The notes beneath the pieces were generated by a model that was not told where the DNA came from, did no database searches, and worked only from the letters and a program-made list of their open reading frames with translations. Positions 2,977 through 61,345 of a stretch of DNA of 64,000 nucleotides are shown here, one piece after another; the stretch's first letter is position 1, and each line of letters begins with the position of its first letter. Both the position numbers and the translations under genes were made by a program. Source of the stretch: Paragordius varius (Eukaryota; Animalia; Nematomorpha); assembly GCA_964247055.1 (NCBI GenBank), contig OZ176050.1, forward strand, positions 10,540,001-10,604,000. Direction: 5' to 3'.

Positions 2977-5482
2977 ATGTCAAGCCCCAAAGATATTTAT
3001 TATGAGGCAAAAAAACCTCGAACAAAATGGCAAAAATTTATGCGAGCCATATGGAATTCCGATCGTAAAGAGTTTTTAGGCAGAAATGCTGCTAGTTGGG
3101 GTATTATCATTATAATATTTAGCCAAAATTTTAATTGCTTATATAATTTTTTACCTGTTTTTGGCTGGTTTCTTTGCCATAATGATGGTTGTTTTTTTAC
3201 GTACACTAAGTCGGACGCGTCCTCGATACATTTTAAGTGACAGTATTATAGGCACAAATCCTGGTAATATATTTATTAAAAAGATCAAATCATATCTTAT
3301 GCTAAAATATTTCAATATAGGTATGGGTTATAGACCTCATCCTGATCCTGAAAAAACTCTTATTTATTTTCATCCCAATAAACCAAACACTTATTCACCC
3401 TACATCGATGATTTAAACAAATTTTTGAAAAGTATGCGCATATTTTTTGTTGCATTTATTATGTTTATGATTATTTATAATTTACTAATTTATGTAACAC
3501 TTTTAATGATGCTAGTTATATATAAATATTTTTTGGCTCTAAGCAAAATATTTTCATACACATATTTAAACGATAAATATGCTTGAAGCCTTTTTTAAAA
3601 TAAAAATAACATATATTTTTTCATCATTGGTGTTGGTGATATATTTAATAATATTTATTATTTTAGAACTTTTTTATACCATATTTTAACTTTTTTCAAA
3701 ATTTGGCTAAAAATATTTTTTTGAATTATTTTTAAAGCATATATATACAATGGATAAATATTTTGCATTGTTATATGTATATACTTTGTGTGTTGTAGCG
3801 CGATGAAAGATTTATTATTAATTTTAATAGTAAAAAAATAATGAATTTATTGATTTAGATACAGTTTATGTAGTTAGCTATATTTAGTTAGCCTACTACA
3901 TAGTATGTGCGCAATACAAAATAAAGCTATAACTTAAAGAGTAATTTATTAAGCGGTTAAATGCCGGTTAATATTTTTGATTTTGCGGATATTTTGACGA
4001 AATACTTAGCGTTGTTTTTGCATAATGTTTACGGACTAAACCTTCAAAAATTTGAGTAAGCTGTTTTTTGAATATGATTTTCAATGCACGATTAGGTTTT
4101 AGCGAATCTATGTATTTTCTGTCGATTATGGTATATTATGTTATTCCACTCATTACAATAATATATTTTATATATAGTTAAATACATCCATATTATTGAT
4201 TATATGGTCGTTAAGAGCAAAAAAAGTTTAAATGTTTGAAACGAAGGAATCTTTTTTTATTGATTACACTTTTGATCTATTTTTCCATGTCAGCTTAAAA
4301 CTTAAAATTATTTTATCTAACAAAAATATAATCACTAACATATTTATATATATTTGATTGCTAATTTTGTACAATACAACCCATTTTTAGCATATGAAAC
4401 GAGTGATCAAATGGAAGGGGAAGATTTCCTCAATTGTAATTACCAGCAAAAGGTTAGAGATGAACAAATCTGTAAAGTCGATATTAAGGACGTGAGCGAA
4501 GGTTGTGATAAATCCAGGGATTATGGTTACAAGGATGGGAAACCATGCGTCCTACTCAAACTTAACAAAGTTAATTTTTTTACGTTTATACATATTTTTT
4601 TGGGTATTACTTTAAAGTGTGGATCCATATTTATTGGTTATTGGAAAGGTAAATAAATATAAATGATTGATATAGTGTGAAAATTTGTACCTACTTTTAT
4701 TTTATACAATATCTAAAAACTCTCCGCAAGTGACGTAAACATTAAGAATAAGTCACATTATTTCATAAGTATTAAATGACATAAAAATTTTAAAAATTAT
4801 AATATTGCATGCAATTGAAAATTTACATAATATATTAATAAACATTGACTTTAAAAATAAAGCACATGATTGTGAAAATATCTCAAATTTTAGTTGAGTC
4901 ACAAGTTTATCATAAACCTCCCTTACGGTATTATTCTTATTTAATATTACAACTATATATTTACTGATATAATTTATCTTTGACTGTAATGCAAATTTAT
5001 TGGCAGAAGAAATATTTTTTGTTTTTGTTAATGATGGTACACTTAAATATGTTTTCTTTTAACTTTATTTGAACATAATTTTTTTTATTGTTGATCTGAG
5101 ATTATGTCCAAAATTTGAACTTTTTGTAAAGAAAATAGGATGGGAACTACCTCTAATGTTTTTGCAAGTTTTTTGTTAAATACCTAATTTTATATTTGCT
5201 AATGTACAATTTGTTGATTTTTAGTAACTATCATCTATTTTTCTGGTCCAATAATTTAGTTCTCTTTTTTTTCATTGCTTATAAATTATTTATGAAGCAA
5301 ATTTCCATTGTAATTAAATGTGATGCATATAATGAATGAACAGATCAAAATTGCATCTCCGATTTTAAATTTTACCATATAACTATTATACTTTTAGGTT
5401 AATTTATATTATCATATGTATACTTGATATATACCCATTTTTTGTTCATTTAATTAAACATTAAACAGTGTTTACTTTATAG

Positions 5483-17241: not shown

Positions 17242-17561
17242 AAATTATTATAAAATTCCAATATGAAGTGTTAAATGACATTTGAGATAAAAATGGTATT
17301 TTATTTTTATTTTTAATATTTCATCCGTAACTATAGATTTTGTAAGTTAGCCGCAAATAATGCGAATACATTTCAAATTCCAAAAATATGAGTTTTAAAG
17401 AATAAATCAGTAATGATTGTGCACTGGAATATACTTGAAAAATGGTCATTCAATAATTGTGTTTATATAAAAAAATAATATCCTAATATTACGCTGATAA
17501 TGGTTGAAAGTTATTTTTATGTCTTGTTTTGATATTTATTATCAAAAATAAAACCGTTTTT

Positions 17562-17749
17562 ATTGACTGGGAAAACGTTTTTATTGATTGGGAAAATGTT
17601 TTTATTGACTGGGAAAATGTTTCTATTGACTGGGAAAACGTTTCGATTGACTGAGAAAATGTTTCGATTGACTGGGAAAACGTTTCGATTGACTGGGAAA
17701 ACGTTTCGATTGATTGGTAAAATGTTTCGATTGACTGGGAAAACGTTTA
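17562..17749. repeat. 21-bp minisatellite, about 9 copies
   Basis: Unit ATTGACTGGGAAAA(C/T)GTTT(CG/TT), repeated head to tail without spacers. Confidence 0.95.
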
Positions 17750-18619
17750 TTTAGAATGGGAAATGGTATATATAAATATATATCAATTAATAAAAATGAA
17801 ATAAAATAAGATACGAATCCTAAGAATTTCGAATTGGAATATTTTACTAAGGTAATTTCGTGCATTTTTTGAATGAATGAAAACTGATAAAAAGAATAAA
17901 CTTGGAAAATAAATAGATAACAATGGTAATTATAATAGTTGTTATAAGTAATAAGAATTTAGAATTTTTCGTTTGTGAAGTGGTCGAACGCGCGCGCGTA
18001 ACAACAGTTGATTGGAGGTGAGAAGTCTATACATTTAATAAATTCCTTATAATGGTCTATTTATCTTTTTCTGGTTTTGGCCCTTACGAATGTTAAAAAG
18101 TGTTTAAGATTTTTTGGTAACTACTCCACATCATAAAATGGCGAAATTAACTAACGTTTTGTTAAATAAATTTTTTGGTATGCTTCATACAAAAATCTCT
18201 AAAATATATCATAAATAAATGCAAAACAATATTTTTATAAAAATTTTATTTTTATATTTGGGCTTCGAAAATGTCAAATTTTTGACCTGTCTAAAAGGGC
18301 ACAATCTGTTAAAATAAATGCAAAAGAGCCGAATCGGACGATTAATGTTTTAACTTGCTATATTTTAACATCAAGAAAACTTTTTTATGTATTTTCCTTA
18401 AAGATTTAGTTTACGGAATTTTTATGAAGGGAGTTTTATGGTATTTGTGTTTTCGGAATGGTAATTGGCAATCTGATTTAGAGTGCCCTATGTAACATAA
18501 TAAAGTACATGGAAGTTTACATAAAATATAATATAAATGGTAAATCATGTTAAAGCTTTTATAAACAATTACCTATTAATATTATCTTTCCCCTATTGTA
18601 AGGCTAAAGGGCTTTCGTT

Positions 18620-24413: not shown

Positions 24414-24465
<52 letters not shown>

Positions 24466-27400
24466 CATGTATATATTGTTTTTAAAACTATAATATGAGA
24501 TTTACTGCACACATAAAACATTATTTGATAATAGGATTATTATTTTAAAACTTTACCTTTTTTACTTATTAATTTTTTTATAATCCTTCCTGTCGGCGTT
24601 CCATTGTTTAATTAAATGATTAAATAGTAGGCGAATTTTTTTTTTGGAATCATATTTACTTTTTTTACTTCATTATTATTATTATAGATCGTCAACAACA
24701 AACTCTTCCACTAAAACTTCTCCAGTTACAAAAATTGGTTGTTCCAATACTCGATCGCGATTAAATTTGTCATTTTCTCCGCCTATATCTTCACCAAATT
24801 CTCTATCACAACCAACAAAAACAGGAAATCTTAGTAGTGGCAAAAACAAAAAAAATTGTACTGCAGGAGCAAATAAAACATCTCTTTTAACAAGAGCTAC
24901 TAAGAAAACGAGTTCAATACCTTCGCCTGCTTCTGGTTTTATGACATGTTCGCCGCTTTCTAATTCAACGCATTCACCATCATCCTCAGTCATCAGTTTA
25001 CGAAACAAACCGGTGCCACGAAGGCGCTCAGAAACGGTTCTAAATCACAAAATCGATTCAAAAACAGAACGATCAAGTCTAAAATCTCTAGCAAACGAGG
25101 ATGAATACGTAACTTTTGATCAAACGGAATACACTAGCATATTGAGTGAAATAACAGAGTTGAAATCCCAATTATTAGAGCTGCAACAATGTTTAATGCA
25201 AGAACAACAATGTCATTACAGCGATGAAATGATGGAAGAATTTAATGATGCGCCGAAATCTCCGCTTCTTAGTGACTCGCTTAATCGGATCAATAACATT
25301 AGTCAATCTTCATCTTATTTAGAGGTAAAATTATTCTATTTATACAGATATATATTAAAGACATTGGGTGGAGTGAATAAAAAAAAGGAAACACTCTTTC
25401 CTTAGCTTTTTTAAGAGATTCCTTAATTTGAAGTGAATAAAAAGCTAAGGAAACCCTAAAAAAATTAACATTAGATTTTTAAGGAAACACTTGTTTTCAA
25501 GTGAATAAAAAAATTTATTAAAGGAAACCCTACATATTTTTTAGGATGCTAAATACCATCCTTAAATATTTATAAATTTTATAACAATCGATAGTAGAGG
25601 ATCAAACAAGGCAATTAGAGCTAATATGGTTTTGATATTAGATTCGATAAGTTTAAATTTCAATTTTCAAAGCTATTTTTATATATTTTAGATTTTTCTA
25701 GTATATTTGGAATACAGTGTAGAAAATAAATGTTTGCTCAACGATCTTAGATAAAAAACAAAAAAACATATAAAATATGCATGAAAATCAATTATGTATG
25801 AAACAAATTCTACGATTTAATAATCAACCAATAAACTTTATGACAAAATACTTTTCCCTGATTTCGATTAAAGAAGAGGAAGTCGTGAGGCGACAAAAAC
25901 AAAAATTTTTTAAGATTTGCCGCAGATCCCGGGAATCAAATTTCTATTAAGCTAGTTTTTGGGGTAAACATTTTAACAAATATCATTTCTTATTGTATGC
26001 AAGCCTCAAAAAATTTAAGTCAATCAGTTTCTTATTGATTCTTGTCAAATGAAAATTTCTATAAAAACTTTTATTTTATCATAAAAAATGTATAAATAAA
26101 CTTTAATCTATTTATTATTTAATATCATAAAATTTAGATTGTCATAATAATTCAAAAATTCTTCCGATTCTGTGCGATCTTAAGAATTTAGGAAAATTTC
26201 CTCCGATTTGGTGCGATCTTTTATGACAACGTTTCTCTATTATTTAAATCATATTTTTTTGATTGAAGTTTTCATATCTATCGCTATATCTGATGTATCA
26301 CATAATAATTCTTAGTTTGTGTCAACAAATCATTTTGTAGATTTTTATAAGCTTCTTTTTTTGAATTACAATATATAGTACCATAGATTTGTTTAACTAT
26401 GGGATATCTAAATTATTAAATATTAAGTTACTTGCAAGAAGAAGTATCAATTTTTCTTTAGGTACATTTCTATCGGTTTTAGGCATGGTTTAAGGAAACT
26501 CGAGAGTTAATCAGATGTGTTTTTTATATGAATTATAAGGAAACCCTTTCTTTGAAAAAGTGAGCATAGGAAACACTTAAAGGGTTTCCTTTTTTTTATT
26601 CACTCCACCCATTTTCCTTCTGAGTTGTTTAAGCTTGAGTGTTTAAATATAGAGTAATTCAAAAAATATGCTTATTAAAAAATATTACCTATAATATTTA
26701 TGGTAACTGACCTCCCCAATACTATTTTAAATTGAAATGATATTTTGATATTATATATCAAACTCATCTTAAAGAAAACCAATCTAAATAATATAATATG
26801 TCCAACAATCATACACTCTTAAATTGCCCCCCCTATCCTTCGCGTAAACATAATGATCATACGTTCAATAAAATATAGAGTAAACTAAACATATTATTGT
26901 TGTTTCTGTGGATTTTTTAATATTTTTTTTATAATTTAATAGACCCATATAATCAATAATATGGCTGTTTATTGTACATTTATCATTCAACTTCCATTAA
27001 TTTTTTTTTGTGTTTACAGCTCATAGTTATTGAATTATCTGGAACTGTGGTGCATAATATAAAATAATTTTTAGCCAAGAGCAATAGATCTGTTTAATAT
27101 TAATTCCAGGAGTGGAAGTTGGTTTCGGTTCGCATATTTTGCAAATGGCGTTTTGTTTCATCAGATTGTTTTATGATCAAAAGATTATAATTTTGATCAA
27201 ATTTTTTTGATCTAATATTAATAATTAGTTGCAAAAACATAAGCAAAGTTATAACTTTTGTTTGGCCAATTTTACAGTATATATTTAATGATTCGAAAAA
27301 AATTAGAAAAGTATTAGTTTATATAATATTCCGATCCATGATTTGCACACTATATTTGGTATTTTTGGAAATAACTCTGCATAAAGTGCTTATTTATTTG

Positions 27401-34511: not shown

Positions 34512-36526
34512 ATTTTTAGAGAATTTTTAGGTTTTACTATTTAGGGTAAAAAATTTTTTTACCTAATGTCTAATTTAGTAGAAAGAGTAAATCTATATTG
34601 AATGTAGAAATCACAGGATTGAATTTTGATCAAGCGTTTTAAACGTAAAAATATTTGTATCTAAAATCTAATTTGCTAGGTAAAAGGGAATCCAAGAAAA
34701 ATCGATTTCAATTATTTTAAAAGGATTTTGGAGTTAAAAACTTGTTTTCAACCAATAATATATGTTGCACTTACAGATATAACCATAAAATTACTGATCA
34801 GATAAAATATATAAAAAATGATATAATTAAAAAAATTTAACCAATTTTTTTATGTTTAGAATTGGAATTTTTGATGACACAAATGGATCTAACGTTTATA
34901 ACCGAATTTGTCAATAGTGGTGTAAGGGATAAACTGAACATATTTCCATCATTAAAGGATTTGTACGAAACTTTAACACAAAAATGCTCAGAGAATCAAT
35001 TCAATCATGAAATAGCTTTTGATACTGCATACACGCTCAGATGCTTAAATGATGAGTTTAATCTGAACGATTCAAATAATGTAATAATTTCTGTTATAAG
35101 GAATATTTTGGACGATTTTTACCAGGCATTCATGGAACGTCAGATATTAATTCCAAAATGTTTCCACAACAGTAGGCATATCGAAATTATTCACAATCTT
35201 AGTCCCTTATTAAATTATGAATCCAACCAGGAAGCATGGGCCAAAAATGTGGGAAAAAACAATCTACCGAAAATTCAAAATTTATCTCTCAGTGTGCAAA
35301 CTTGTCCTTTAATTAATCTTATTACAAATAGTACAACGAGGGAGCAAATGAATAAAACTCTTTTATTAATAACATTTAATTATGCTTACTATGATTTGAT
35401 CCCGTATTTATTAGCCATACACAGTTCCCTATTTCCATATATAACTTTTTGTGGTCCACAAATTGATGATTCCATTGCTACAATGCCTCCAGAGAGGAGA
35501 ATTGAGATTTCAAAGATGACTAATATAAATTTCATTCCTATCGCGTCAAATATGAAAGGATTTTACCTATATGAATGCGTAATATTAGCAATCGCAAAAT
35601 ACCAATATAATAATGATATCGAAGGCATTTTGTATATAAGTGATGATATATTACTTAATGTGGCAACTCTAAATAACTTTGATTTTTCACGAATGGCCTA
35701 TCTCAATTTTGAGGCTGGGACCAAATCTTCTCTGAAAACGAATCAAATTGGGAATGCCAATAACAATCGAATGGCTGATGTTATAAATATGTCAGGATGT
35801 TATCGCAATAATAATAATAATTTAAGTATATTAAATTCGATTGATACTGTTTTGAGTATGAAGCAACATTTAAATAATATGACTACTGTTAACTTAAATA
35901 CATTAAACGGGACCCAAAGTTATAAAACATTTTTGGATGATGGCATCATATGCGATCGAAAGCTCTTAAACTTTGAAAAACGTTTACTGCAAAACAAACA
36001 ACGCCTTTTAACAGTTATGGGACAAATGAAATTCTTACTTTATATCATGCAAAAAACTAAAAGTATATATATCTATCCTGCTTCCTCTCAAGTCATTTCC
36101 AAGGCTTATGCTAGTCTATTAAATCGCACTCAAGGAGATGGTCGAGTTTATTATGGAGAATCTGATATTTTTTATATTCCTAAAAGAGTTTTTGCCCAAG
36201 CCTTACCATTACTAAATTTGTTTCGACATTATCATGTGATGTTGGAAATCGCCGTACCCACCATTTTAAACTCCATTGATTTTGATAGTGCTAATGAATC
36301 TCCTTACCCCATCACTTATGTTAAATACAATCATTATTGGAATGATAAACGGTCCCAAATTCTAACTTTAATAGATAATTTACGCAAATCTCTATATGTT
36401 CACCCTGTTAAACTCCGTGAAATTGTTAATTCGCAATCGAACGAACTGAGTGTCGATATTTTATGTCACATACTTTTGCAAATGAATAATAATGAACTGC
36501 TAAATAATAAATACCAAAGCAATTAG
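34260..36526 (+). CDS. STELLO/DUF288-like putative glycosyltransferase (C-terminal domain); 5' end unresolved
   Basis: Large exon 34860-36526, plus in-phase small exons 34260-34330 and 34371-34461. Motifs recalled from STELLO/DUF288 proteins: LLLITFNYAYYDLIPYL, GFYLYECV, EGILYISDDILLN (DD motif), SDIFYIPKR..LEIAVPTIL, YVHPVK. Confidence 0.7.
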
Positions 36527-39338: not shown

Positions 39339-42300
39339 ATGGGTTCTGATAAAGCACAAGATGTTCAACCTCCAAGGATGTCACATTCTTTTGTACTTAT
39401 GGGAGTTGGTAATTTATATAAATTGCAAATTCTGTTAAAGAATGATAAATATCTATAATTTATAATAAAATTTAGCTTATATATGCGTATAAAGTAAAAT
39501 TAGTTTTTAATTTTGGACTTTTATTTAAAAATTTTTTTTACCAAAAATACATATAGTTTAATGGATAAGTTACTAGGTAACTCTTTTCAAAACAATGGTT
39601 CAGCAAACCCTCCGTTTGAAAGGTACCATTGTGTAATATTAGCTTAATTGCATAATCATAATATTTAGTAAGGAGTAAATGATTAAAGCTAATAAGTTTT
39701 TACGTAATTAAACCTTATCACTTCGAATGGGGTATCTAAATATCTTAGACCATATTTAAATTGATAATTTTAAAAAACTGAAAGAAACGTTTCAAATTTA
39801 AATTATGCTTCTATTCCAATAAAAATTATATAAATAAGACAAATTATCTAAGTAAAATTTAGTTTTGAAAAAAAATTCCGTATCAAACCACTTCGACGCC
39901 ATTTTTATTTTACAACATTTTTGCAAAATATCGCGTTATTTAATCTAATGCCAAAATTAAATGTACTTTTTAATTGAAATCACATTCAATATTGATATAA
40001 ACACAAAAAGTGGTTTATTTTGCATTATGCACACATGTAATAGCTAGATTTTTACCTTTATGTTTTTTACCTCTTTATAAGTTATATTAAGTATTTGTGA
40101 ATAAGTTTTTATATTTCGGTTCATTGATGTTATACAAGTGCAAACTTTTGCATGATTTAATTTTTTCCTTATTATTTGAAATATTTAATTTTAAACAAGC
40201 CTGGATACAACTCCCCAATTTAAATCGAAGGACTGGAATGAATGTGTTGTGTCCAAGTGTTAACACATTCAAAATAAAAAAAATTATTTTAAGGAGCACT
40301 AGTTTTGATTTTGGGCGTGTTTAGCGTTTCTGCCATAGTTGTTTCACGAGGGACAAATAGTAGATTATTTCCAAAGAATCCAATTTATGCCAAAATGATC
40401 AATCAAAGCATTCCACTTGTCTGCATAATTAGCTTCGGAGGAATATTGTGTTTCATTTTCGGTGGCGTGATGTTTGCATACGAGGTAAAAATATTTTACC
40501 GTAAGAATACTGTTTATAATTTGAAGTGCAATTTTCTAGTACTAAATATACATTAATTTATTATTCAATTTATAAATCACGTATTTAAAATTGATATCCA
40601 TGAAAAATAATTATTAAGAGGCTGTCACAGCAGAGTTGTTATTGGTGTAGTAAGCGGTTAAAACAAATCATCATCTTTCAAAAAATAAATAAAATATTTT
40701 TTATGGCCATCTGTATATGTCGATTATTTCATAGAAAAAACAAAAGGAAAAAGAGGAGCATCAAGAAATTCAAATCGTCAGAACTAAAGGTAATGCAGAA
40801 TCATTGGCTGATAATAAGAAACCAGAAGAGATAAAATTACTAACTAGTAAAGCATACAAAGGGGCAACCATAACAATTCCAAATGTTAGCGGTTCAGGAG
40901 CGCCTTCACCCACCTCACCAATGGAGAAATTAGCGGAAGATCCGTGGTGGATTTCATGGGAACATATGAGTTTAGAAAGTCAAATTCTAGGTAAGGGTAA
41001 CTTTGGACAGGTACAGAAGGGAACTGTATTCGATAAAAAAACGGGCCAAACGCAAGTTGCAGCCATTAAGACTATGAGAACCACAAAAGGTATTTTATGT
41101 CGTATACCAAGTGACATTTTAAATGTCGATATTTTCCAATCGTTAACCTTAGATTTTGAAACTTATTGACTCTAAGTTAATATAATATGAGTTTTATTAA
41201 ATAAGAAAAACATAATGTAGACATTTTGAAAATGAAACCATGCCTCCAAAATTGTTTTTAATACAAGTAGCATATTTAAGAATGCAATAAATAAATAAAA
41301 ATTCTTTTCCTGGTTATCATATCAAAAAATTGTTTAAGAATTTTATCGGATTAGGAAACAAAAACGCTGAAGAAGCATACGAGCTAATGGTTGCCGAAAT
41401 GGAGATTATGAAAAAAATTGGTTACCATCCAAACATTGTTAATTTGCTTGGATATTGTGAACATGATGGTACTTTTTAAATATTTTAGATTGTTGACTTA
41501 ATTCAGCCTTGAGTAGGCCCAAAAACCTAAATTAAATTACGTTCTGGCAGCAGTATTTTATAAAAGAATTTGATTAGAATAAAAGCAATGGAAAATAAAC
41601 CCTGAAATATCAAATTAAACAATTTTTAAGATTCAAATATATCGGCGAATCCATAAATATTCCATTGTTTTAAAGAAGAATTAGAGGCCGAATCAATAAG
41701 TCATTTTGGTATACAGTAAGATTGATAAAGAATTATCACGAAAAAGCAAATGAATGTTCAAATGAAGAAAATGATTAGCACATGGTTAAAAAATAAATGT
41801 AAGTAGATGCAGCAGAAAATCATCAAGGGTCGTATATGGGGTATTTATTACATATTTTTAATCATGTGCTAATCATTTTCTTTTGGATATTTATTCGTTT
41901 ATTCTAGAAAATCATTTATTAATCTCATATATATATATTACTACAAAAAAGGATTTTTTTAACTGTTTTGTGATTAGTACTTTTATACTAAAATTCAATG
42001 CAATTAAGTAATATTTTGGATAAGAGATAAAATTATTTTAACTGACAAGGAAACTAAATTAAAAATCCATATTGTGTTTTAGGGTCATTGTTTGTAGCCA
42101 TTGAATTTGCACCTTACGGCGATCTAAAAACTTTCCTTAAAAAGGCTAAACAAACCAAGCAGGATATGGAAAAGAAAGGAGAGAAGGGAGATCCTTTATC
42201 GGTGACGCAAATGTTAAAATTTGCTCTGGATGTCGCCAAGGGCATGGAACACTTGGCTAAACATGGGGTAAGTATCTATTTATTTATAAAAAAATAATAT

Positions 42301-43359: not shown

Positions 43360-44197
43360 AAGTATAAGTGAAATAAAGGAAACACCTAATTTATATATTT
43401 TTGGAGGTTGTATTCGTCTCTTTTGCTGAGCCTTTTGCTTTTTTAACGTCCTCAAGGGTATTTTTTGGGTTTTCAATTTCATCTTTTTAAAATTCCTTCT
43501 TTTCCTCATCTCTAATTATAATCATGATTACCAAATAAATCCAAAAAGCTCATAAATACATATATGAGTAATTTGATCGTTTATCAAATTATTAAGCGAG
43601 AGTATGGAACGTATCGTTTTCATCAGATTTGGTTAAAATAATCGGGTACAGTAATGTCTGGCAAAAGATTCAAGATATCTAAAAGGATGTATAAAATTTG
43701 ATGATTCGGGGCCATATTTTCTATAAATTGTACAAAAAATATATATAATTTACCATCAAATTCGTTGAAAATATTACTAATTCAGTGTTTCTGTTACCTT
43801 TTATAATTGAATTTGTATTCTATTTAAAAATATTGTCATACTAGAAACATTCAAAAATATTTTTAATAGTTTTATTCAATACTTCAAATTTACTATTTAA
43901 CAAATAAGTCATTATTAATTAGCCCACCAGAATTATAAATTAATTAGCTATATAAAAAAAATCTTTTAATTTAGAAAGTAAAAAATTAGCTTGAATAACT
44001 TGTAAGTAAAAAGAAATAGTTTTTAACTTTTCTTCCAAGCCCTTGAGACCCAGGAATTGGTAGGTAATGCGTTGCGAAAGAGTCCCAGCATTGCTTTCCT
44101 TAATATCCCGGAGTAAATGTTCAACGCCCACTTCTTCGGCTTCCTCAGCAATCTCCGAAGGAATATGTTGGAAAGTTTTGCTTGATGGCGTACCATC
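43360..44197 (-). pseudogene. PSMD7: Unprocessed pseudogene (3' half) of 26S proteasome lid subunit PSMD7/Rpn8
   Basis: [73 protein letters not shown]. Lesions: expected donor reads CT (43989-88); deletion/frameshift with TGA at 43625-43623; out-of-phase last donor; TAA at 43489-43487. 5' exons were not recognised. Confidence 0.8.
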
Positions 44198-44407
44198 CTA
44201 TAAAATTATAAAATTGTGTAAAATAAAAAAATTTAAATTAAATAAATTGAGTGCCTAGTCTGATCGCTAAACAATTTAATGCGCCGAATAAAATACATTT
44301 TATCTTAATACCGACAACCGACAAACATCGTATAGCTTTTGAACACATATGCAAGTATTAATAAAAAATTACACTAATAAAATAAATGAATAATTTAGCT
44401 AAATTAT

Positions 44408-52200: not shown

Positions 52201-55200
52201 CCTATGATACTAGCCTAAAATCTTTATTACCCCTTAAAAAACAAATATTTTAGTATAGGGGGGTTATTTAAATGAGTCGCTAAGTAAAATTTTACGCCCT
52301 GAAAAATGCGCCGCCATAAAACAATTTTTTGGTTTTGAAGCAATATTCCAAGAAATTATAGGAACATATGGAATCCATGATAATTCCAGATATTCCCCAT
52401 GTGTGAAGACAAAAATTTTTCCCAACGCTCTTTTTAATACCTGCCCCTATGTAAGGAGTTACCCGCTAAAAACTAGTATATAGAAATTGCGTTGTTTTGG
52501 AGCGAATTTACAGAAAATTTATGAAGCCATTAGAGCCCATTAAGGGCTTTAAATATTACCCATAACAAGGTAAAAATTAAAGTCAGGCGTTTTTTATCGT
52601 TAGTTTAGGTAGTTTATGGCCTAAAAATACGTCATTATATAACGATTATTTAGTGTTGAGGTATTTTTTCGAATAATCCATGAGACAAAAAATTGCAATA
52701 TTCTACATTTATGTAGGCTTTAAGGGTTTTTAACACTAAAGAAGTGTAGGGAATACCATTCCTAAGATGCATTAAAAGCTGTTTTGCCACCATCTTCTGG
52801 AGCTCTTCTTCTGTATATAGGATATCCATTGTTATCTGTAATCGTATTTGTTAATAAAAACCTGGGATACCGCTTGAAGCATATTCCATCTTTCATACAT
52901 GGGCACGTAGGGTTTAAATCGTTACAGGGTCCATGTATCATATATTTCATAACAACATCATTTAAATCTGTATCAATCGTAGGATCAGGTATTTTAGCGG
53001 ATATAAAAGAATCTATTTCACTTGACTGGTATTTTGGAATAAAGCCAAATCGATATATGTGCATGTGGTAGTCCCCTCTTTTGCCACTCGACTGAGTACA
53101 TCCAACATTGCACTGTACCAAACACCTCGAATCTAACTATACAATCATCAAAAATCTAAGCTTCTGAGATAGTAGTAGAATTTTTATAGATTTCCAAAGA
53201 GGATTACGTGTAAATGTAATAAATAAATCTGGCGCCCACATTGTGCCACATACGCGAGAGCATCCTGGGCATATAGATGCATATGACGAGGACTACCTAT
53301 GTATGAGGATGGTAGTATTGTAAATCTCCCAATATCGTTAATATTATATTCATTAATTAAAGCATCTCGCAGGTGTATATATATATTCTTCAGAACAAAG
53401 TTTAGCCTGATTTAACCGAAGATATAACATACGCTCTGTTTTCATTTTTGCATACATATCTACAATGTATTGGTGAAATAATTGTCGGCATCTTAAAATA
53501 TGATTATCCTGACCGTCCCTTATCATTAATCGATACGAATAATATTTCATTGCGCTACATTTTTTATTAATTTCTTGTTTGGTGATAGATTAATCATTAT
53601 AACATTAAAAATTATATCCATCTCTGCCATCCTAGAATATTAGTGGATATTGTAATAATAAATTATTGCAATGGATCAAGTTCAACTATATCATCACCAA
53701 CAAAATATATTTGTAAAAAATTGTGATGGCTCCCTTGTGCCGGAAGCAAAGAGCCTGCCTTTGGATTTGACCTTTTACTTATAAAAGTTAGTTCATTAAT
53801 TTATACTATATCAGTTCCAAACGATGTCATTTGAAAGCAAGAATTGTACCCCCTAATATTTTGCAAAAAATGTTTAGAATCAGGAGTAGTATTGGCTAGA
53901 AGATTATTTAATGTCATGGGTAAACTCTGAAATGGTGGTAAATACACCTTACGTGATGCACAACATAGCCCTTTGGATTCATTTTTAAATCTTAGAGCAT
54001 TACAATAGGAACATATTATACTCATGGAGCCAATGTCATCCTCACGTAATGCGTGATAGTCGATATCTGTATCATAATGAAAGGCTAAACGATGGTATTG
54101 AGGTTAGCATCCATTACCATTGGTGTATGTAAATTTTTAACATGGGTCCTATAGATAAAATCGCTTTATCTATAATACAAATAGAACAGCAATACGCATA
54201 CAAGGTCCATCATGCTGATCTGTTGTTTGGCTCTTGATTTGAAATTAATGTTATAACATAATGGAGTAGGAGTGCACGATACAGCGGGAACATTATGATA
54301 CAGATATCGACTATCACGCATTACGTGAGGATGACATTGGCTCCATGAGTATAATATGTTCCTATTGTAATGCTCTAAGATTTAAAAATGAATCCAAAGG
54401 GTTATGTTGTGCATCAGGTAAGGTTCATTTACCACCATTTCAGAGTTTACCCATAACATTAAATAATCTTCTAGCCGATAATACTTCTGAATCTAAACAT
54501 TTTTTGCGAAATATTAGGGCAAATTCCTGCTTTCAAATGACATCATTTGGAGCTGATATAGTACCAACTAATGAGCTAACTTTTAGGGTGAGAGGTCAAA
54601 TCTATCATAAAGCAGGTTCTTTACTTCCACAACAAGGGATTGATCACAAATTTTTACAAATATATTTTGTTGGCGAAGATACGGTTGAATTTGGTATCCG
54701 TTGCAATAATTATATCAATCTTAAGAGGCCAATATTAATGCAGTTACAGGAAATATTACATCGTCATAATCAGTTGGTGAAATTGTTCAAAACAGCTATA
54801 GATATGATGCCGTATGATACGCATAAAATTGTTATTCATGCTGACAAAGTGCCTCATGGCCAACATGAACGCAGATATAATGCTCCTACAATGGATGAGG
54901 TGGCGATTGTTATGGACGGCGATCATTTTTATTCAAGAGATATTGTTCTTCACCTGAGAAGCAATAACCTAAAAAATGTGTCCTAAACTCATAGATGTTA
55001 CGATCCACTACAATATCCACTATTATTCTGGGATGGCACAGATGGATATAATTTTAATGTTAAAATGATTAATCCTATCACTAAACAAGAAACTAATAAA
55101 AAATGTAGCGCTATGAAATATTATTCCTATCGTTTAATGATAAGGGACGGTGAGGATAATCATATTTTAAGATGCAGACAATTATTTCACCAATACATTG

Positions 55201-57457
55201 TAGATATGTATGCAAAAATAGAAACAGAACGTATGTTATATCTTCGCTTAAATCAGGCTAAACTTCGTTCTGAAGAATATATACACTTACGATGCTATAA
55301 TTAATGAATGTAACAACGATATTTGGAGATATACAATATTACCATCTTCATACATAGGTAGTCCTCGCCATATGCATGAATATGCCCAAGATGCGCTCGC
55401 GTATGTGGCACAGTGTGGGCGGCCAGATTTATTTATTACATTTAAATGTAATCTTATTTGGGAATCTATAACTGTTCTCCTACTCCCTGGACAGGCCCCA
55501 AAAGATAGGCACGACATCACAGCTCGAGTGTTTAAGCAAAAGCTTAGATCTTTAATTGAATATATAGTTAAATTAGATGTGTTTGGTGAAGTGCAATGTT
55601 GGATGTACTCAGTGGAATGGCAAAAGAGGGGATTACCAAATGCACATATATTGATTTGGCTTTATTCAAAAATAAAGTCAAGTGAAATAGATTCTATTAT
55701 ATCCGCTGAAATACCTGATCCTATGACTGATAAAAAATTAAATGAGGCTGTTTTGAAATATATGATACATGAACCCTGTAACGAATCAAACCCAAGGTGT
55801 CCATGTATGAAAGATGGAAGATGCTCCAAGCGATATCCCAGTTTATTAACAAATACGATTACAGATAACAATGGACCTTTATACAGAAGAAAAGCTCCAG
55901 AGGATGGTGGCAAAACAGCTTTAATGCATCTTAGGAATGGTGACGTAGAAATAGATAATCGATGGGTGATTCCCTACTCCCCCTTATTGTTAAAAACCTT
56001 TAAGGCTCACATAAACGTAGAATATTGCAATTCTGTAAAATCGATCAAATACATTTGCAAGTATATAAAAAAAGGCAGTGATATGGCTGTTTTTCGCGTC
56101 CAACCTGAAATTGCAAGTGAAAATATTAAAGATGAAATATCCCAGTATTAGTCAGGAAGATATATAAGTAGCAGTGAGGCTGTTTGGCGAATATTTTCCT
56201 TTCCCATACATGAACGTAGCCCTACAGTTGTTCATTTATCAATACATTTAGAAAATGGGCAACGTGTCTATTTTACACCTTCTAATGCCATAGAGGTAGC
56301 TAGAAAGCCACCAGATACTACTATAATTGCTTTCTTTAAGTTATGCCAAAAGGACGCCTTTGCGAAAACATTCCTATTACATATGGAACTCTAAAAAAGA
56401 ATTCGAACGGCGCAAGCGAGAGATTCAGTTGCTAGTCTGGTATATGTAAAGGTGCGGCATTACGAATGTTTTTTACTTCGTCTGTTATTGATAAATGTGA
56501 GAGGACCATCTTCATTTAACAATTTGAAAACCGTAAACGGTGTTTTAAATCATACGTTTCGCGGTGCATGCCAGGTGCTCAAGTTGTTGGAAAATGATCA
56601 ACATTGAGATTTATGTATCCATGATGCCCCAAACATCCTACCCTCATCAAATACGTACTTTGTTTGCTATTATATTAAAGCTTCACCCTCATAACCGGCG
56701 GAGCTATGGGAAAAAAAATCAAATGTCTGAGGACATCTTGCTGCAGTACTGTTCAGGTAATTTAATAATAATAACGATGAAGTAGAAATTTTTAATAACG
56801 CTTTGCTAAAAATAAAATTCCCCACCCCAACTTCTTCGCGCTGCGTAGCAGGCCGATTGCGCTAAATTATATTTATGTAAATAAAACCATTTGTATCCAT
56901 TTCATTGGTGTCATCCTCCATTTGAGTCGCATTCAATGTTTCTTCATCTTCGTTTATCCAATTATCAACAGTGACTTGATTAAAACCACGATTTATTAAT
57001 TGTCTAAAATGCGTAAAATAAAAAGGATTTATGAATTACCCAAATATACCAAACCGTCTATTATTCAATAAAATGTAAACAAGTTATATAACATACCATA
57101 TCATAAAAATATTTCAGCCCTTCATATAATTGAAAAATATATCATTTTACATTGTCCAATTTACTTAAAACAACGATAAATATAACTATTTAAATTTTTT
57201 TAAAATTTACGAGATTATGGTTTTTAAAGATATTTTATTGTTAGGTGACAAAGTGAGGGAGGCGACCCTTTAAAGAAAATTTATTAAATTATGGTAAATA
57301 TTTGTATATTTTAATCAGCATAAGAAAGCGAATACCGATAGCTATTTATTATGTGATTTAACATAGTCTCCTTAAAGACTTTACAGTTATAATATATAAA
57401 CATTATTTTTAGTACTCAAATGAATGCTGTTATATACTAACAGTTATGTTCATAACA

Positions 57458-57526
<69 letters not shown>

Positions 57527-59025
57527 ATACATTTTAAGATTTTCTTTCCTCCTATGTAAGTCCATAAGAACTGGTTTTAATTGATTGAAATGAGTTTCCA
57601 ACTCACCACATTTGGTTTCGTGTTGATTAATTTTTTGTTGAAGGGCCGTTAAATGGTTCAACAATTGTACACGTTTAGTTTGCATGGTTGACATGTTATT
57701 CTCAATGATAGACATATCCCTTCCACTAAGCATAGTAACGTAAGTTTGAGCATTACGGGTCAAGAGCAACATTTGACGATCAAACGCTTCAATCAGGCAA
57801 TTAAGTGCATGAGCCGCTGCAAACATAGCATATGTACTTTAAATTAATCTTTTCAAATTTACCCTTAAACAATTTAATAAGAGTTTCAACATTTTATATA
57901 TAAACCATTTACGCCTCAAATTCATTCTTAAACACTTCTGGATTCCGGATATTTTAAATCCGCAAACATTCCAACACAACAATCTCCACTTCATTTTAAA
58001 ATTCAAAAATTTAATACTTATTTCTGGGCTAAATTGACTTATGAATAAGATTAAATTTGTTTTAAACAAAGTTTTTTATTGGATAATATTTTTAAAAAAT
58101 AGGTAGTTTTGGATTTAAATGCCTGAATAATTATATTTTGTTATATGATTATCTATATTTTTGAAAAAAACAACTTATAAACTATAGTAAAACGATAAAA
58201 AATTAATAAATTTCATCTAAATTATTGATTCGGCCTAAAAACCGATAAATTATTTACAGTTTATTTGTGAAATAAATGGTATCTGGAGCTATCTCCAAAA
58301 AAATTTTACGCTTTGTTTAAAAGAACAAAAGCTTTAACAACAAATCATAATGTTTAAATATTACCTTTTCGATCTTTTTCCAATGTTGATCGGGTTAAAT
58401 TTAATTGTACATAGGTACGATTAGCAATACGGGATTTCATTAGATGTTTTTGAGCAATATTTTGCAATAAAGAACGATATGATATGGGAGATTTTTTAGG
58501 TGAACATCCTATTAAATTATCGCTATCCTCCATAAATTTGTTGCTCTCATGACCATTAGATGATTTGGATGACGATCTAGATCGGTAAGAAGATTTACAA
58601 ACAGGTTCTCCCAATTTTATATCAAGAGATCTATTATATTCAATGAGAGAATGTGATTGATAAAATTCAATTAAATTTTGAAGGCTTGTAAATGCCAAGG
58701 GTTTGGCAAACCCGTATTTTCCATGTTCAAAGTAAATCTTTATCAGTTTGTTGGTCATATCTTTTCTATATTAATGTATAATTAAAGGTCATACCTCAAC
58801 GTAAGGGTAAACTCCTTATATCGTTTTTGATTTAAAGAATATCTCACTAAAAAGGATCCGTCACTAGCTCCATTCAATAACTGGTCACAAAACACTCTGT
58901 CTACATTACCCCAAAACCAATCGATATTTTCTAAGGAATCATCGTCAATATGTTTCGCTATAATTATTAAATTAAACAATAATACATGGAGATCCATATC
59001 CCGAATCATCCGTTACTTTGGTCAT
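49207..59025 (-). CDS. PIK3R: Class IA PI3-kinase regulatory subunit, p55/p60 type (nSH2-iSH2-cSH2, no SH3/RhoGAP); 8 exons, 503 aa
   Basis: Exons 59025-58986, 58957-58795, 58765-58365, 57816-57531, 57003-56888, 50725-50603, 50502-50349 and 49435-49207 splice GT-AG, in phase (1512 nt). nSH2: WFWGNVDR..DGSFLVR..FTLTLR..NKLIKIYFEHGKYGF. iSH2: QLKPVLMDL. cSH2: RAENLLRRKEMGTFLIR..VRHCLI..YGFAEP..SLVEHNAELN. Confidence 0.93.
51420..52690. repeat. Diverged ~320-bp tandem repeat, about 4 units, within the Helitron 5' region
   Basis: ATATGGAATC recurs at ~51733, ~52051 and ~52366. GCCCT.AAAAATGCGC and (T)CCAG.T.TT recur with the same period. Confidence 0.75.
52691..54079 (-). pseudogene. Inverted, internally deleted Helitron Rep fragment
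   Basis: Minus strand: LAFHYDTDIDY, MSIICSYCNALRFKNESKGLCC, YYSYRLMIRDG, WQKRGLPHAHI, IHGPCNDLNPTCPCMKDG. It is the reverse complement of parts of 54291-56033. Confidence 0.9.
54291..56815 (+). pseudogene. Helitron Rep (HUH endonuclease) region, frameshifted, PIF1 helicase domain absent
   Basis: PDLFITF, VEWQKRGLPNAHILIW (HUH motif with His to Asn), SIKYICKYIKKGSD (YxxKY tyrosines), LLINVRGPSSF. Several stops and frameshifts. Coding homology stops just before the 3' terminus. Confidence 0.92.
57461..57523. repeat. (TA)n microsatellite, the longest of many (others ~5484, 8483, 12178, 12468, 24415, 27414, 28729, 34481, 42571)
   Basis: Direct inspection. Confidence 0.95.
58766..58794 (-). other. 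29-nt GT-AG micro-intron (PI3K regulatory subunit intron 2)
   Basis: GTATGACCTTTAATTATACATTAATATAG. Removing it restores the SH2 sequence FTLTLR|KDMTNKLIKI. Confidence 0.9.
58958..58985 (-). other. 28-nt GT-AG micro-intron (PI3K regulatory subunit intron 1)
   Basis: GTATTATTGTTTAATTTAATAATTATAG. Removing it joins MTKVTDDSGYGSP to SKHIDDDSLENIDWFWG in phase. The N-terminus is not conserved, so support is weaker. Confidence 0.7.
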
Positions 59026-59063
59026 ATTGAACACAGCACTTTTTACATGAATGTGTGGAAAAG
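59026..59063. promoter_or_regulatory. 38-bp interval between divergent start codons of the PI3K subunit and endosulfine genes
   Basis: Minus-strand ATG at 59025 and plus-strand ATG at 59064. A shared or overlapping promoter/5' UTR is inferred, not shown. Confidence 0.5.
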
Positions 59064-59646
59064 ATGAATACTATTATTGAAGAATCAAAATCGTCTCCTG
59101 AAAAGTCTGATGTCGCTAATCAATGTATCGATGAAAAGCAAAAATTTCAAGATAAATACCAAATGAAAAAGCCATTGACGTCTAATTTTTTGTGTAAGAG
59201 ATTGCAAAAAGGAGTAAAAAAATTTATAAATTTAGCAAAAATATTTTGACTCTGGTGATTATAATATGGCTCTATCGAAGAGAAAGATGTTTGCAGACAA
59301 AGTGTTAGCTGTTTCTGACGTAACTAAACAAGAAGAAATTATGAATATTCAGAAAAAATATGAAGATAATTTGCAAAACGCTCAGGAGACGGAAACTGAA
59401 GAAAAACAACAAAGCAATATCCTAATTCATGTGCCATCTATAACAACCACTACCGATAACGATGATTTGGATGAAATAACCGGACATATTATACCAACAC
59501 CTGACAATGTTCCTATGCGAAAAGCTTCGATTCCCTTATCCGGTAACACAATTGGATTGCCTGGAACCCTCAAATCTTCTCAACAATCTCACCCATATTT
59601 AACCGTTTTACAAGGTCAAGCACACCGTCATTCAACAGCCTCCTAA
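59064..59646 (+). CDS. ENSA: Endosulfine/ARPP-19 family PP2A-B55 inhibitor; 2 exons, 186 aa
   Basis: Exons 59064-59213 and 59236-59646 give SNFLCKRLQKG|QKYFDSGDYNMA (Greatwall phosphorylation site FDSGDY) and ITGHIIPTPDNVPMRKAS. Confidence 0.93.
59214..59235 (+). other. 22-nt GT-AG micro-intron (endosulfine)
   Basis: GTAAAAAAATTTATAAATTTAG. Exact removal rebuilds the invariant KRLQKGQKYFDSGDY motif. Confidence 0.95.
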
Positions 59647-59907: not shown

Positions 59908-61345
59908 CAGTGATACTCAAACCGCGGGCCGCATGGGCCCTAAGAGTGCTTTGAAATTGCCCTATGCCCATATTGATACTTAAATTATTTTTTATTCATC
60001 ACATCAACAAATTTTCGCTTATTTTAATATTAATTTATTTTCTTACAATTTGAAATGCAGAAAAATTCCCTACATTAAAATGATTTCAAAAATTTGTCAT
60101 ATGTTGTTTCTCTGTATTCTATTTTATTATTTTGAAATTTTTATTCCATTCCCTTTTGAATAATTCTTACACCCAAACTTCCATATATATTCTTTTCATT
60201 GCTATCCTATTATTTTTAATAACGTATGCCCATAAAATATTTTCGAATCAACATCATTAAATTTCGACTTATTTTTTTATAGCATAATTCAAATTATATT
60301 CCTATTTTTTGAAAAAACTTACATAATTAAAACATAAATTCAAAGGATAACATTTAATGGTAAAAAACGTAAATTATGCGAAAATTGCTCCTTTATAAAG
60401 AATATGAAGAAAAATTTTTTTTCGCGTTAAATAAAAATGTTGTTACCTGCCTTATATGTAAGGACAACATAATCAACGAGGAATTAAAATAGTTACCAAT
60501 TAAGAATACACGAAAGAAATCGATTTTCTCGAAATATAAACTCTTCACGATAATAATGGTATATCTATGAAAAAATTGGTTTCAATCTGCACAGATGGCT
60601 ATCCACTATGATTAAAATAAACAAATAATTAATTCTTTTGAAAAACAAAATAATTTGCAAAATATTTTATCCTTTCCCTGTTTTATTCATCAGCGAAACT
60701 TGGTTTCGCATGTATTAGATGAATCACCCAATTCAGTAACTAATACGTAGTGGATATAGTTAACCACATCCGTAGCAAAGACTTTAACCCCCGTATATTA
60801 AAACTTTTGATTACTAGCCTGCCTTTGCGCCATTACTAAATACAAGATAAATACACTCCTATATTTTCCAATACTTAAAACGATTCATGAAGAATATATG
60901 GAATTTACCGCAGAGATCAATTTAATAATAGGCAATTTAATATTTTTATCCAATAAGATGAAATTCAGAATTCAGGAATTTAGAAATATTAAAAATTGCC
61001 CAAAACTCGTTGAAAATCCTAGGCATATGGATATATCCAATATTAAGCAACTTGCGCATTGGGGTTTTGATCTGGCGAATATCATTTCAGTTGATTTTAA
61101 GATGATTCCGATTCGGAGGCTTTACTCAAGGAGAATCGTAGAAAAGAAAGATATGTAGACTTTTGGCAAGATGTGCCCAATAAATATGAAAAATATAAAA
61201 AAATCTGTCAAGTTATCCTAACTCTTTTTCCCTCAACTTACACCTGCGAGACGGCATATTCAGAAATGAAGTATGCCAGGAATACATATAATCGCTTAAC
61301 CGATATGGACCACGTATTTAAGATTGGCTTGTCATGAGGCGAAAC
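59908..61345 (+). mobile_element. Degenerate hAT (Buster/SPIN-like) transposon
   Basis: Left TIR CAGTGATACTCAAACCGCGGGCCGC at 59908. Transposase remnants VNHIRSKDFNPRIL (~60760) and FPSTYTCETAYSEMKYARNTYNRL (C-terminal dimerisation motif, ~61230). Confidence 0.7.

What the first reader, a model, noticed from the sequence alone, without database searches (positions are those of the whole stretch)
59214..59235. 22-nt spliceosomal intron fixed by an invariant protein motif
Seen: the endosulfine frame breaks at CAA AAA GGA|GTAAAAAAATTTATAAATTTAG|CAA AAA TAT TTT GAC TCT GGT GAT TAT. Removing exactly these 22 nt, which begin GT and end AG, gives LQKG-QKYFDSGDY, the family's invariant Greatwall-site motif. 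Known: introns this short are reported mainly from ciliates, nucleomorphs, microsporidia and dicyemids, while most animals have a lower limit near 40-70 nt. Inference: this animal's spliceosome works far below the usual animal minimum, with no room for a normal polypyrimidine tract.
Basis: partly seen in the sequence, partly recalled or inferred. Interest (0 to 1): 0.85.

Follow-up and report, generated by a model that had tools for sequence, protein, structure and literature searches.

The report
Real 22-base intron in endosulfine gene
A 22-base stretch that interrupts a conserved cell-cycle gene is almost certainly a real, extremely small intron, one of four under 30 bases in this window, and the animal seems to be a horsehair-worm relative, a group not yet reported to have introns this short.

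Summary
Window 59214-59235 is a 22-nt GT..AG segment. Removing it joins a 50-codon and a 136-codon open frame into an endosulfine/ARPP-19 protein. That protein aligns without a gap across KRLQKG|QKYFDSGDY to human ARPP19 and 119 homologues. A zebrafish-relative ensa gene has a 1957-nt phase-0 intron at the same position, so this is an old intron that shrank, not an insertion.

It is not alone. The window holds a second 22-nt intron (Na/K-ATPase beta, 3101-3122) and 28-nt and 29-nt introns (PI3K p85). Both p85 introns match, in position and phase, 55-nt and 1378-nt introns of the nematomorph Gordionus. All four start GTA, are 79-91% A+T, end at the first downstream AG, and are the 5'-most introns of their genes. 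The same genes also carry introns of 57 nt to about 6 kb.

Animal introns under 30 nt are already documented in dicyemids and, since September 2026, in myxobolid myxozoans. Here the p85 phylogeny and a uniquely shared motif place the window next to Gordionus. I read it as a probable third animal lineage, with a mixed rather than uniformly miniaturised intron regime. No transcript or raw-read evidence could be obtained.

The parts
59064..59213 (+). Endosulfine/ARPP-19 coding exon 1 (50 codons, ends ...KRLQKG)
59214..59235 (+). The 22-nt intron, phase 0. GTAAAAAAATTTATAAATTTAG, 91% A+T, no internal AG.
   Evidence: The position matches the 1957-nt intron of Danio aesculapii ensa.
59236..59646 (+). 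Endosulfine coding exon 2. Starts QKYFDSGDYNMA, contains the second conserved motif IIPTPDNVPMRKAS, and includes the stop codon.
2977..3100 (+). Na/K-ATPase beta subunit coding exon 1 (ends ...GRNAASW plus 1 nt)
3101..3122 (+). Second 22-nt intron, phase 1. GTATTATCATTATAATATTTAG. Removal gives ...NAASW|AKILIAY..., contiguous with Artemia beta2 residues W63|A64.
3123..3263 (+). Na/K-ATPase beta coding exon 2 (transmembrane helix up to ...IGTNPG)
3264..3320 (+). Probable 57-nt intron, GT..AG, phase 1. It is in frame and has no stop. Removal gives GTNPG|MGYRP, matching GTNPGLGFRP.
   Evidence: Less certain than the others because retention would not break the frame.
58986..59025 (-). PI3K regulatory subunit (p85/p55-like) coding exon 1, MTKVTDDSGYGSP plus 1 nt
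   Evidence: The DSGY(I)GSP motif ends exon 1 of Gordionus p85 as well.
58958..58985 (-). 28-nt intron, phase 1. GTATTATTGTTTAATTTAATAATTATAG. Same position and phase as the 55-nt intron 1 of Gordionus p85.
58795..58957 (-). p85 exon 2 (first half of the N-terminal SH2 domain, ends ...FTLTL plus 2 nt)
58766..58794 (-). 29-nt intron, phase 2. GTATGACCTTTAATTATACATTAATATAG. Removal joins R373|K374 in human PIK3R1 numbering. Same position and phase as a 1378-nt intron of Gordionus p85.
58365..58765 (-). p85 exon 3 (second half of the N-terminal SH2 domain plus linker)
57817..58364 (-). Ordinary 548-nt intron of the same p85 gene (GTAATA...TGTTTGCAG). It shows that long introns with a normal pyrimidine-rich 3' end coexist with the tiny ones.

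Best explanation
Positions 59214-59235 are a genuine U2-type GT-AG spliceosomal intron, 22 nt long and phase 0. It sits at an ancient intron position of the endosulfine/ARPP-19 gene and has shrunk in this lineage.

It belongs to a class of ultra-short introns in this genome (22, 22, 28 and 29 nt in this window). These introns share the following:
- a 5' site reduced to GTA;
- very high A+T content;
- A residues 6-10 nt upstream of the 3' end, lying in TTAAT-, ATAAT- or TAAAT-like contexts;
- essentially no polypyrimidine tract (at most TTT);
- use of the first AG downstream of the donor.

What is shown: the frames, the exact junction, the conserved position and phase, and the recurrence in three genes.

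What is inferred: the intron is recognised by intron definition, with U1 pairing to only about 3-5 nt. The branch adenosine lies only about 12-16 nt from the 5' splice site. 3' site choice is by proximity, not by a U2AF-bound pyrimidine tract, as proposed for myxobolid and dicyemid mini-introns and, in a different form, for U2AF-independent human short introns.

The host genome is probably a nematomorph or a close relative. There the tiny introns are the 5'-most introns of genes that also carry introns of 0.5-6 kb.
For: - Exact junction: gapless alignment across the junction to ARPP19 and 119 homologues.
- Only one canonical deletion is possible.
- Both exons are kept open against an 8% per-codon stop rate.
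- Danio aesculapii ensa has a phase-0 GT..AG intron of 1957 nt exactly between ..KRLQKG and QKYFDSGDY...
- Three more homology-fixed tiny introns occur in the window: ATP1B 22 nt; p85 29 nt, orthologous to a 1378-nt phase-2 Gordionus intron; and p85 28 nt, orthologous to a 55-nt phase-1 Gordionus intron.
- The joint chance of GT..AG at the few admissible deletions in the three genes whose junctions homology fixes exactly (ENSA, ATP1B, p85 29-nt) is of order 1e-7.
- Published precedent: introns under 30 bp with a GTa-only 5' site and an A stretch before the AG in myxobolids and Dicyema (PMC13644364; PMC6543705).
Against: - There is no transcript evidence. The spliced protein is absent from the 15-billion-protein collection, so splicing and its efficiency are inferred only.
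- The assembly cannot be checked against reads.
- Pfam Endosulfine reaches 26.9 bits on the 69-aa spliced piece, just under the 29.8 gathering score.
- The orthologous introns in the nearest available relative, Gordionus, are 55 and 1378 nt, so the tiny state is not corroborated in a second species.
- A GT..AG 22-mer that joins two long frames in a degenerate Helitron turned out to be spurious. ORF-joining alone is therefore weak evidence; the case rests on the homology-fixed junctions.
Confidence: 0.86

Rival explanations
1. Assembly artefact. A longer intron was collapsed or partly deleted during assembly or polishing, leaving 22 nt.
For: It cannot be excluded without reads. A+T-rich, low-complexity sequence is prone to collapse, and (TA)n tracts occur nearby.
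Against: A collapse would have to keep both splice dinucleotides and leave no internal AG. It would have to do so four times in three genes. The four segments share a GTA start and a T/A-rich ...TAG end but are not repeats of each other. Exon sequence on both sides is intact to the base.
Confidence: 0.05
2. Real intron, but inefficiently or conditionally spliced. Much of the mRNA would retain the 22 nt and encode a truncated 61-residue product or be degraded, as reported for microsporidian mini-introns.
For: The 5' site is weak (GTAAAA) and there is no pyrimidine tract. PMC13644364 cites a median splicing efficiency of about 25% for microsporidian short introns. Retention introduces an early stop.
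Against: The gene carries only this one intron, and both conserved phosphorylation motifs lie downstream of it or span it. A functional protein therefore needs substantial splicing. Nothing in the sequence distinguishes regulated from constitutive splicing.
Confidence: 0.12
3. Inactive gene copy (pseudogene) carrying a 22-nt insertion that only happens to begin GT and end AG.
For: The window does contain degenerate genes: frameshifted Helitrons and a truncated PSMD7-like fragment.
Against: Both frames are open far beyond chance. The Greatwall-site and PKA-site motifs are intact. The insertion would have to fall exactly on the ancestral intron position and phase. A processed pseudogene would lack an intron there.
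Confidence: 0.02
4. The 22 nt are removed or bypassed without the spliceosome, by translational bypass or frameshifting, or by somatic DNA elimination of a short internal segment.
For: Programmed DNA elimination is known in some nematodes, and short TA-bounded eliminated segments are known in ciliates (general knowledge, not tested here).
Against: The boundaries are GT..AG, not TA..TA. The positions coincide with spliceosomal introns of other animals. The read-through frame meets a stop.
Confidence: 0.01

Closest known systems
[quoted passage not shown]
   Same: The length class is the same, down to 22 nt. So are the GT-AG boundaries, the 5' site reduced to GTa, the A residues a few bases before the AG, the missing pyrimidine tract, and the occupation of conserved ancestral intron positions.
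   Different: The host here groups with the nematomorph Gordionus, not with cnidarians. Here the tiny introns are a minority, 4 of about 17, sit at the 5' ends of genes, and coexist with introns of 0.5-6 kb. In myxobolids they are the median. The 3' ends here still read TTTAG or TATAG.
Dicyemid mini-introns (Dicyema sp. median 27 bp, two thirds under 30 bp; D. japonicum mean 38 bp; PMC6543705, PMC6736024)
   Same: Animal GT-AG introns under 30 nt at conserved positions, in a repeat-rich parasite genome.
   Different: D. japonicum has 36.7% G+C, against 29.0% here. Dicyemid introns are almost all short. The proteins here are well conserved and place the window with Gordionus, not with Spiralia.
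Tiny introns of ciliates (Paramecium about 25 nt, Stentor 15-16 nt) and nucleomorphs
   Same: They show that a canonical spliceosome can remove 15-25-nt GT-AG introns with a fixed A near the 3' end (PMC9505925 and PMC5014332, listed).
   Different: They are unicellular lineages in which virtually all introns are tiny. The window uses the standard genetic code and carries animal-specific genes (a tyrosine kinase, p85, Na/K-ATPase beta).
Human ultra-short introns (37-65 nt; PMC4463651) and U2AF-independent, SPF45-dependent short introns (PMC8363638)
   Same: They are rare very short introns inside a genome dominated by long ones, with poor splice and branch signals and a truncated pyrimidine tract. 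This is the same mixed-regime situation.
   Different: The human cases are 37 nt or longer and mostly G-rich. The introns here are 22-29 nt and 79-91% A+T.
Small 5' introns of Gordionus (nematomorph) p85: 55 nt and 73 nt, followed by 1.4-14 kb introns
   Same: The gene, the intron positions and phases, and the 5'-small / 3'-large polarity are the same.
   Different: Gordionus stays at 55 nt or more. In the window the orthologous introns are 28 and 29 nt.

Membership tests
U2-type GT-AG spliceosomal intron | GT at the 5' end and AG at the 3' end | tested here: met
   59214-15 is GT and 59234-35 is AG.
U2-type GT-AG spliceosomal intron | Removal restores one continuous reading frame encoding the conserved protein, with no residue gained or lost | tested here: met
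   Gapless alignment to ARPP19 and to 119 homologues.
U2-type GT-AG spliceosomal intron | Position and phase shared with introns of orthologous genes | tested here: met
   Danio aesculapii ensa has a phase-0 intron of 1957 nt at the same codon boundary.
U2-type GT-AG spliceosomal intron | Branch-point adenosine in a recognisable context, followed by a polypyrimidine tract | tested here: inconclusive
   A residues lie 6-10 nt before the AG in TAAAT-, ATAAT- or TTAAT-like contexts (read directly from the sequences). Only TTT follows, so there is no normal tract.
U2-type GT-AG spliceosomal intron | Absence of the segment from mature mRNA | not testable with these tools
   No transcript or spliced protein of this organism is in the collections.
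Animal ultra-short (<30 bp) intron regime as described for myxobolids and Dicyema | Individual introns under 30 bp with a 5' site reduced to GTa | tested here: met
   Four introns of 22, 22, 28 and 29 nt, all starting GTA.
Animal ultra-short (<30 bp) intron regime as described for myxobolids and Dicyema | Ultra-short introns are the typical (median) intron of the genome | tested here: not met
   4 of about 17 homology-supported introns in the window; the others are 57 nt to about 6.4 kb. The sample is small: one 64-kb window.
Animal ultra-short (<30 bp) intron regime as described for myxobolids and Dicyema | Host is a myxobolid cnidarian or a dicyemid | tested here: not met
   p85 is sister to Gordionus (SH-aLRT 98). 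A 24-residue stretch shares 16/24 residues with Gordionus and 6/24 or fewer with the 61 others. The reverse-transcriptase family is shared with nematodes and Gordionus. Dicyema G+C is 36.7% against 29.0% here.
Endosulfine / ARPP-19 protein family (Pfam PF04667) | FDSGDY Greatwall-site motif within KRLQKGQKYFDSGDYNMA | tested here: met
   Present only after removal of the 22 nt.
Endosulfine / ARPP-19 protein family (Pfam PF04667) | Profile score at or above Pfam's gathering score | tested here: inconclusive
   26.9 bits against a 29.8 cut-off for a 69-aa spliced piece. phmmer against human ARPP19 gives E 5.6e-10. 392 family members were hit at E<=0.1 in the large search.
Endosulfine / ARPP-19 protein family (Pfam PF04667) | C-terminal PKA-site region (IPTPxxxPxRKxS) | tested here: met
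   IIPTPDNVPMRKAS in exon 2, aligned with HIPTPQDLPQRK.S of the homologues.

The most novel reading that the evidence does not exclude
A nematomorph-like ecdysozoan is a third, independent animal lineage with spliceosomal introns of 22-29 nt. Unlike dicyemids and myxobolids, it keeps them as a 5'-polar minority class inside genes whose other introns are 0.5-6 kb. One spliceosome would then process 22-nt and multi-kilobase introns in the same transcript. The orthologous introns in a sister lineage (Gordionus: 55 and 1378 nt) give a direct before-and-after comparison of intron miniaturisation.
Probability: 0.5. Interest if true: 0.72.

Novelty: new member of a known kind. Interest (0 to 1): 0.55.

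Why it matters
Until very recently, animal introns under about 30 nt were treated as annotation errors. They are now accepted in two highly reduced parasite lineages.

A further lineage would show that the lower size limit is not tied to wholesale genome miniaturisation. That holds especially for one whose proteins are not unusually divergent and whose genes mix 22-nt and kilobase introns.

It would also offer a natural system, with a sister taxon that has long orthologous introns, for asking two questions: how the 5' site, branch site and 3' site can be recognised within 22 nt, and why the 5'-most introns shrink first.

There is a practical consequence too. Gene predictors and RNA-seq aligners with default minimum intron lengths of 20-60 nt would break or frameshift such genes. 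This may contribute to apparently 'missing' conserved genes in such genomes.

Tried and rejected
- A search with exon 2 alone found nothing at E<=0.01, because a 20-residue motif cannot reach significance against 5.8 billion sequences. The spliced 100-aa query was needed.
- tRNA and Rfam scans of the window found nothing that helps identify the organism.
- An exact look-up of the 550-aa ORF at 34874-36523 found no record. That ORF also has no Pfam or PDB match.
- The reverse-transcriptase search gave at best 42% identity, so no same-genome copies are in the collection. The best ENA contig, at 46% G+C, was uninformative.
- P0001 and P0228 looked like close relatives by rank but are vertebrate sequences.
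[quoted passage not shown] I rejected it on the p85 tree and the uniquely shared motif with Gordionus and on the mixed intron regime.
- A dicyemid origin was rejected on G+C content, intron regime and phylogeny.
- A 22-nt GT..AG candidate in both Helitron copies (55235-55256 and 53428-53407) was rejected. It would delete the conserved LYLRLNQ stretch, and the real lesion is a frameshift further on.
- PSMD7 was tried as an intron-mapping gene but is only a truncated fragment.
- Endosulfine-p85 synteny is absent from the 10 kb upstream of Gordionus p85.
- A 29-nt GT..AG candidate in the kinase gene (40790-40818) could not be checked, because the juxtamembrane region has no homology.

Full report
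**1. What is there**

An ATG at 59064 opens a frame of exactly 50 codons that ends ...KRLQKG at 59213. A second frame of 136 codons starts at 59236 with QKYFDSGDYNMA and ends at a TAA (59644-59646). Without removal of the 22 nt, translation stops 11 codons past the junction.

Exon 2 alone gives a weak Pfam Endosulfine match (16.5 bits). A 69-residue piece spanning the spliced junction gives 26.9 bits. It also gives a gapless phmmer alignment to human ARPP19 in PDB 8ttb (E 5.6e-10).

A 100-residue spliced query found 392 endosulfine/ARPP-19 proteins. In a MAFFT alignment with 119 of them, none has a gap from -5 to +8 around the junction. The downstream PKA-site region (IIPTPDNVPMRKAS) is also present.

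**2. Is it more than chance?**

I enumerated every deletion near the junction that yields KRLQKGQKYFDSGDY. There are two, both 22 nt, and one is GT..AG. From the window's dinucleotide frequencies the chance is about 0.35%.

The genome is 29% G+C, with a stop probability of 8% per codon. Open frames of 136 and 50 codons therefore have probabilities of about 1e-5 and 0.015. Both halves are being kept open, which only makes sense if they are joined.

**3. Is the position an intron elsewhere?**

Yes. I fetched the annotated ensa gene of Danio aesculapii. One exon ends ...CAG AAA GGG and the next begins CAA AAG TAC TTT GAT.... Between them lies a GT..AG intron of 1957 nt, phase 0, at exactly the same codon boundary. 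The 22 nt are therefore the remnant of an ancient intron, not an insertion. This also argues against a processed pseudogene.

**4. Is it alone?**

No. A scan for short GT..AG segments flanked by long open frames, checked against homologues, gave three more.

- (a) Na/K-ATPase beta subunit, 3101-3122, 22 nt, phase 1. Exon 1 aligns to Artemia beta2 (8k1l_B) up to ...GVNW, and the next frame aligns from AKITIFY.... Removal gives ...NAASW|AKILIAY... with no residue lost. Of the two admissible deletions, one is GT..AG.
- (b) PI3K regulatory subunit p85, minus strand, 58794-58766, 29 nt, phase 2. It joins ...FTLTLR to KDMTNKLIKIY, equivalent to R373|K374 of human PIK3R1. Gordionus p85 has a 1378-nt GT..AG intron at the same position and phase.
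- (c) p85, 58985-58958, 28 nt, phase 1. It links a short first exon (MTKVTDDSGYGSP) to the SH2 exon. Gordionus exon 1 ends ...DSGYIGSP and is followed by a 55-nt phase-1 intron at the same place.

All four start GTA, are 79-91% A+T, contain no internal AG and end TTTAG or TATAG. For the three junctions that homology fixes to the residue (ENSA, ATP1B, p85 29-nt), the joint chance of GT..AG at the few admissible deletions is of order 1e-7.

One control is worth recording. A GT..AG 22-mer that joins two long frames in both Helitron copies proved spurious, because it would delete a conserved motif. The argument therefore rests on homology-fixed junctions, not on ORF-joining.

**5. The rest of the intron spectrum**

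The same genes carry ordinary introns:
- Na/K-ATPase beta: a probable 57-nt intron, then about 0.9 and 1.7 kb.
- p85: 548 nt, with a normal TGTTTGCAG 3' end, then about 0.5, 6.4 and 0.9 kb. The 6.4-kb intron contains two Helitron copies.
- The tyrosine-kinase gene at 40.7-43.4 kb: five introns of roughly 100-600 nt.

So about 4 of 17 homology-supported introns are under 30 nt. Boundaries of the long ones are approximate. All four tiny introns are the 5'-most coding introns of their genes. Gordionus p85 shows the same polarity at a larger scale: 55 and 73 nt, then 1.4-14 kb.

**6. Whose genome?**

The window is an A+T-rich animal genome with a reverse-transcriptase element, Helitrons and a hAT fragment. 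No protein of this genome is in the searched collections.

A full HMMER search with a p85 exon gave Gordionus sp. (Nematomorpha) as the only hit that aligns over the whole exon, including the linker. I assembled the window's p85 from its exons and placed it in a maximum-likelihood tree of 63 p85 proteins. It is sister to Gordionus with SH-aLRT 98. It sits apart from the arthropod, spiralian, vertebrate, tunicate and sponge/ctenophore groups.

This is not just long-branch or compositional attraction. In the stretch LINRGFNQVTVDNWINEDEETLNA, Gordionus shares 16 of 24 residues and no other sequence shares more than 6.

The reverse transcriptase is closest to elements of nematodes and Gordionus, and a copy of the same family lies in a Gordionus p85 intron. 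Gordionus montsenyensis has 26.9% G+C and 64% repeats, similar to the window.

The divergence from Gordionus is large, 44% identity over 354 columns. The source is therefore another nematomorph lineage or a close unsampled relative. I put this at about 0.75.

A myxobolid origin would need a false p85 placement. A dicyemid origin fits neither G+C (36.7%), nor the intron regime (median 27 nt with two thirds under 30 nt), nor the tree.

**7. How it most likely works**

Shown: GT-AG boundaries, exact frame restoration, ancestral position and phase, and recurrence.

Inferred: removal by the major spliceosome through intron definition.
- The 5' site offers only GUA plus variable neighbours (GUAAAA, GUAUUA twice, GUAUGA), matching the 'GTa' logo reported for myxobolids and D. 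japonicum.
- Candidate branch adenosines lie 6-10 nt before the AG, in UAAAU, AUAAU or UUAAU contexts. [quoted passage not shown] It leaves only about 12-16 nt between the 5' site and the branch.
- No pyrimidine tract beyond UUU fits, and the acceptor is simply the first AG. 3' site choice is therefore probably by distance from the branch, not by U2AF65 binding. A U2AF-independent route exists for human short introns (PMC8363638, listed).

Whether splicing is efficient is unknown. Microsporidian mini-introns are spliced poorly.

**8. Comparison with what is known, and novelty**

Introns under 30 nt in animals were described in dicyemids (PMC6543705, PMC6736024). [quoted passage not shown] That paper surveyed 51 metazoan genomes and found such introns only in those two groups (PMC13644364). 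I could not see its species list.

My searches of the paper library for hairworm or nematomorph intron lengths found no report. The closed-access nematomorph genome papers were not readable.

The kind of feature is therefore known. The instance is probably a new lineage, with a different, mixed and 5'-polar regime. I rate it 'new member of a known kind', with interest 0.55.

**9. Limits**

- There is no cDNA and there are no reads.
- This is one 64-kb window.
- The taxon rests on one gene, with support from a transposon family.
- The conservation of the ATP1B intron position in other animals was not tested.
- The 57-nt intron and the 28-nt intron are slightly less secure than the other three.

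Noticed in passing
window 59023-59066: The endosulfine gene (+, ATG at 59064) and the p85 gene (-, ATG at 59025-59023) lie head to head, with only 38 nt between their start codons. This implies overlapping or extremely short 5' UTRs, or some form of 5' end processing. Gordionus has no endosulfine gene within 10 kb upstream of its p85 gene.
   Followed up: partly
window 2977-3320 and 58766-59025: All four introns under 30 nt are the 5'-most coding introns of their genes, and later introns in the same genes are 0.5-6 kb. Gordionus p85 shows the same 5'-small / 3'-large polarity at 55 and 73 nt, then 1.4-14 kb.
   Followed up: partly
window 52765-54103 (-) and 54270-56782 (+): Two Helitron Rep/helicase copies in inverted orientation sit inside the roughly 6.4-kb p85 intron. 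Both are frameshifted. A 22-nt GT..AG that appears to repair the frame is spurious.
   Followed up: yes
window 15294-16974 (-): A non-LTR reverse-transcriptase element (Pfam RVT_1). Its closest named relatives are in nematodes and Gordionus, at about 40% identity. A copy of the same family lies in a Gordionus p85 intron.
   Followed up: partly
window 43380-44200 (-): A PSMD7/Rpn8-like fragment. One well-conserved exon (43943-44197) matches Pfam MitMem_reg. Read by eye, the downstream piece is interrupted by an in-frame stop after ...DYFNQI, and no MPN-domain exons are visible upstream. It is probably a truncated or decaying copy.
   Followed up: partly
window 34874-36523 (+): The longest open frame in the window (550 aa from the first ATG) has no Pfam or PDB match and no exact record. 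I could not tell whether it is a lineage-specific gene or a transposon protein.
   Followed up: partly
window 40790-40818 (+): A 29-nt GTA...AAG segment would join the transmembrane/juxtamembrane frame of the tyrosine-kinase gene to the frame that leads into the kinase domain. It may be a fifth tiny intron, but no homology fixes the junction.
   Followed up: no
window 13063-13351, 17551-17763, 24414-24476, 57461-57523: Tandem repeats: a 58-nt unit x5, a 21-nt unit x9.4 (open in several frames, giving false ORFs), and two (TA)31 microsatellites, one of them inside a p85 intron.
   Followed up: no
window 60811-61334 (+): A fragment of a hAT-family transposase C-terminal dimerisation region, with a weak Pfam match of 19.7 bits.
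   Followed up: no
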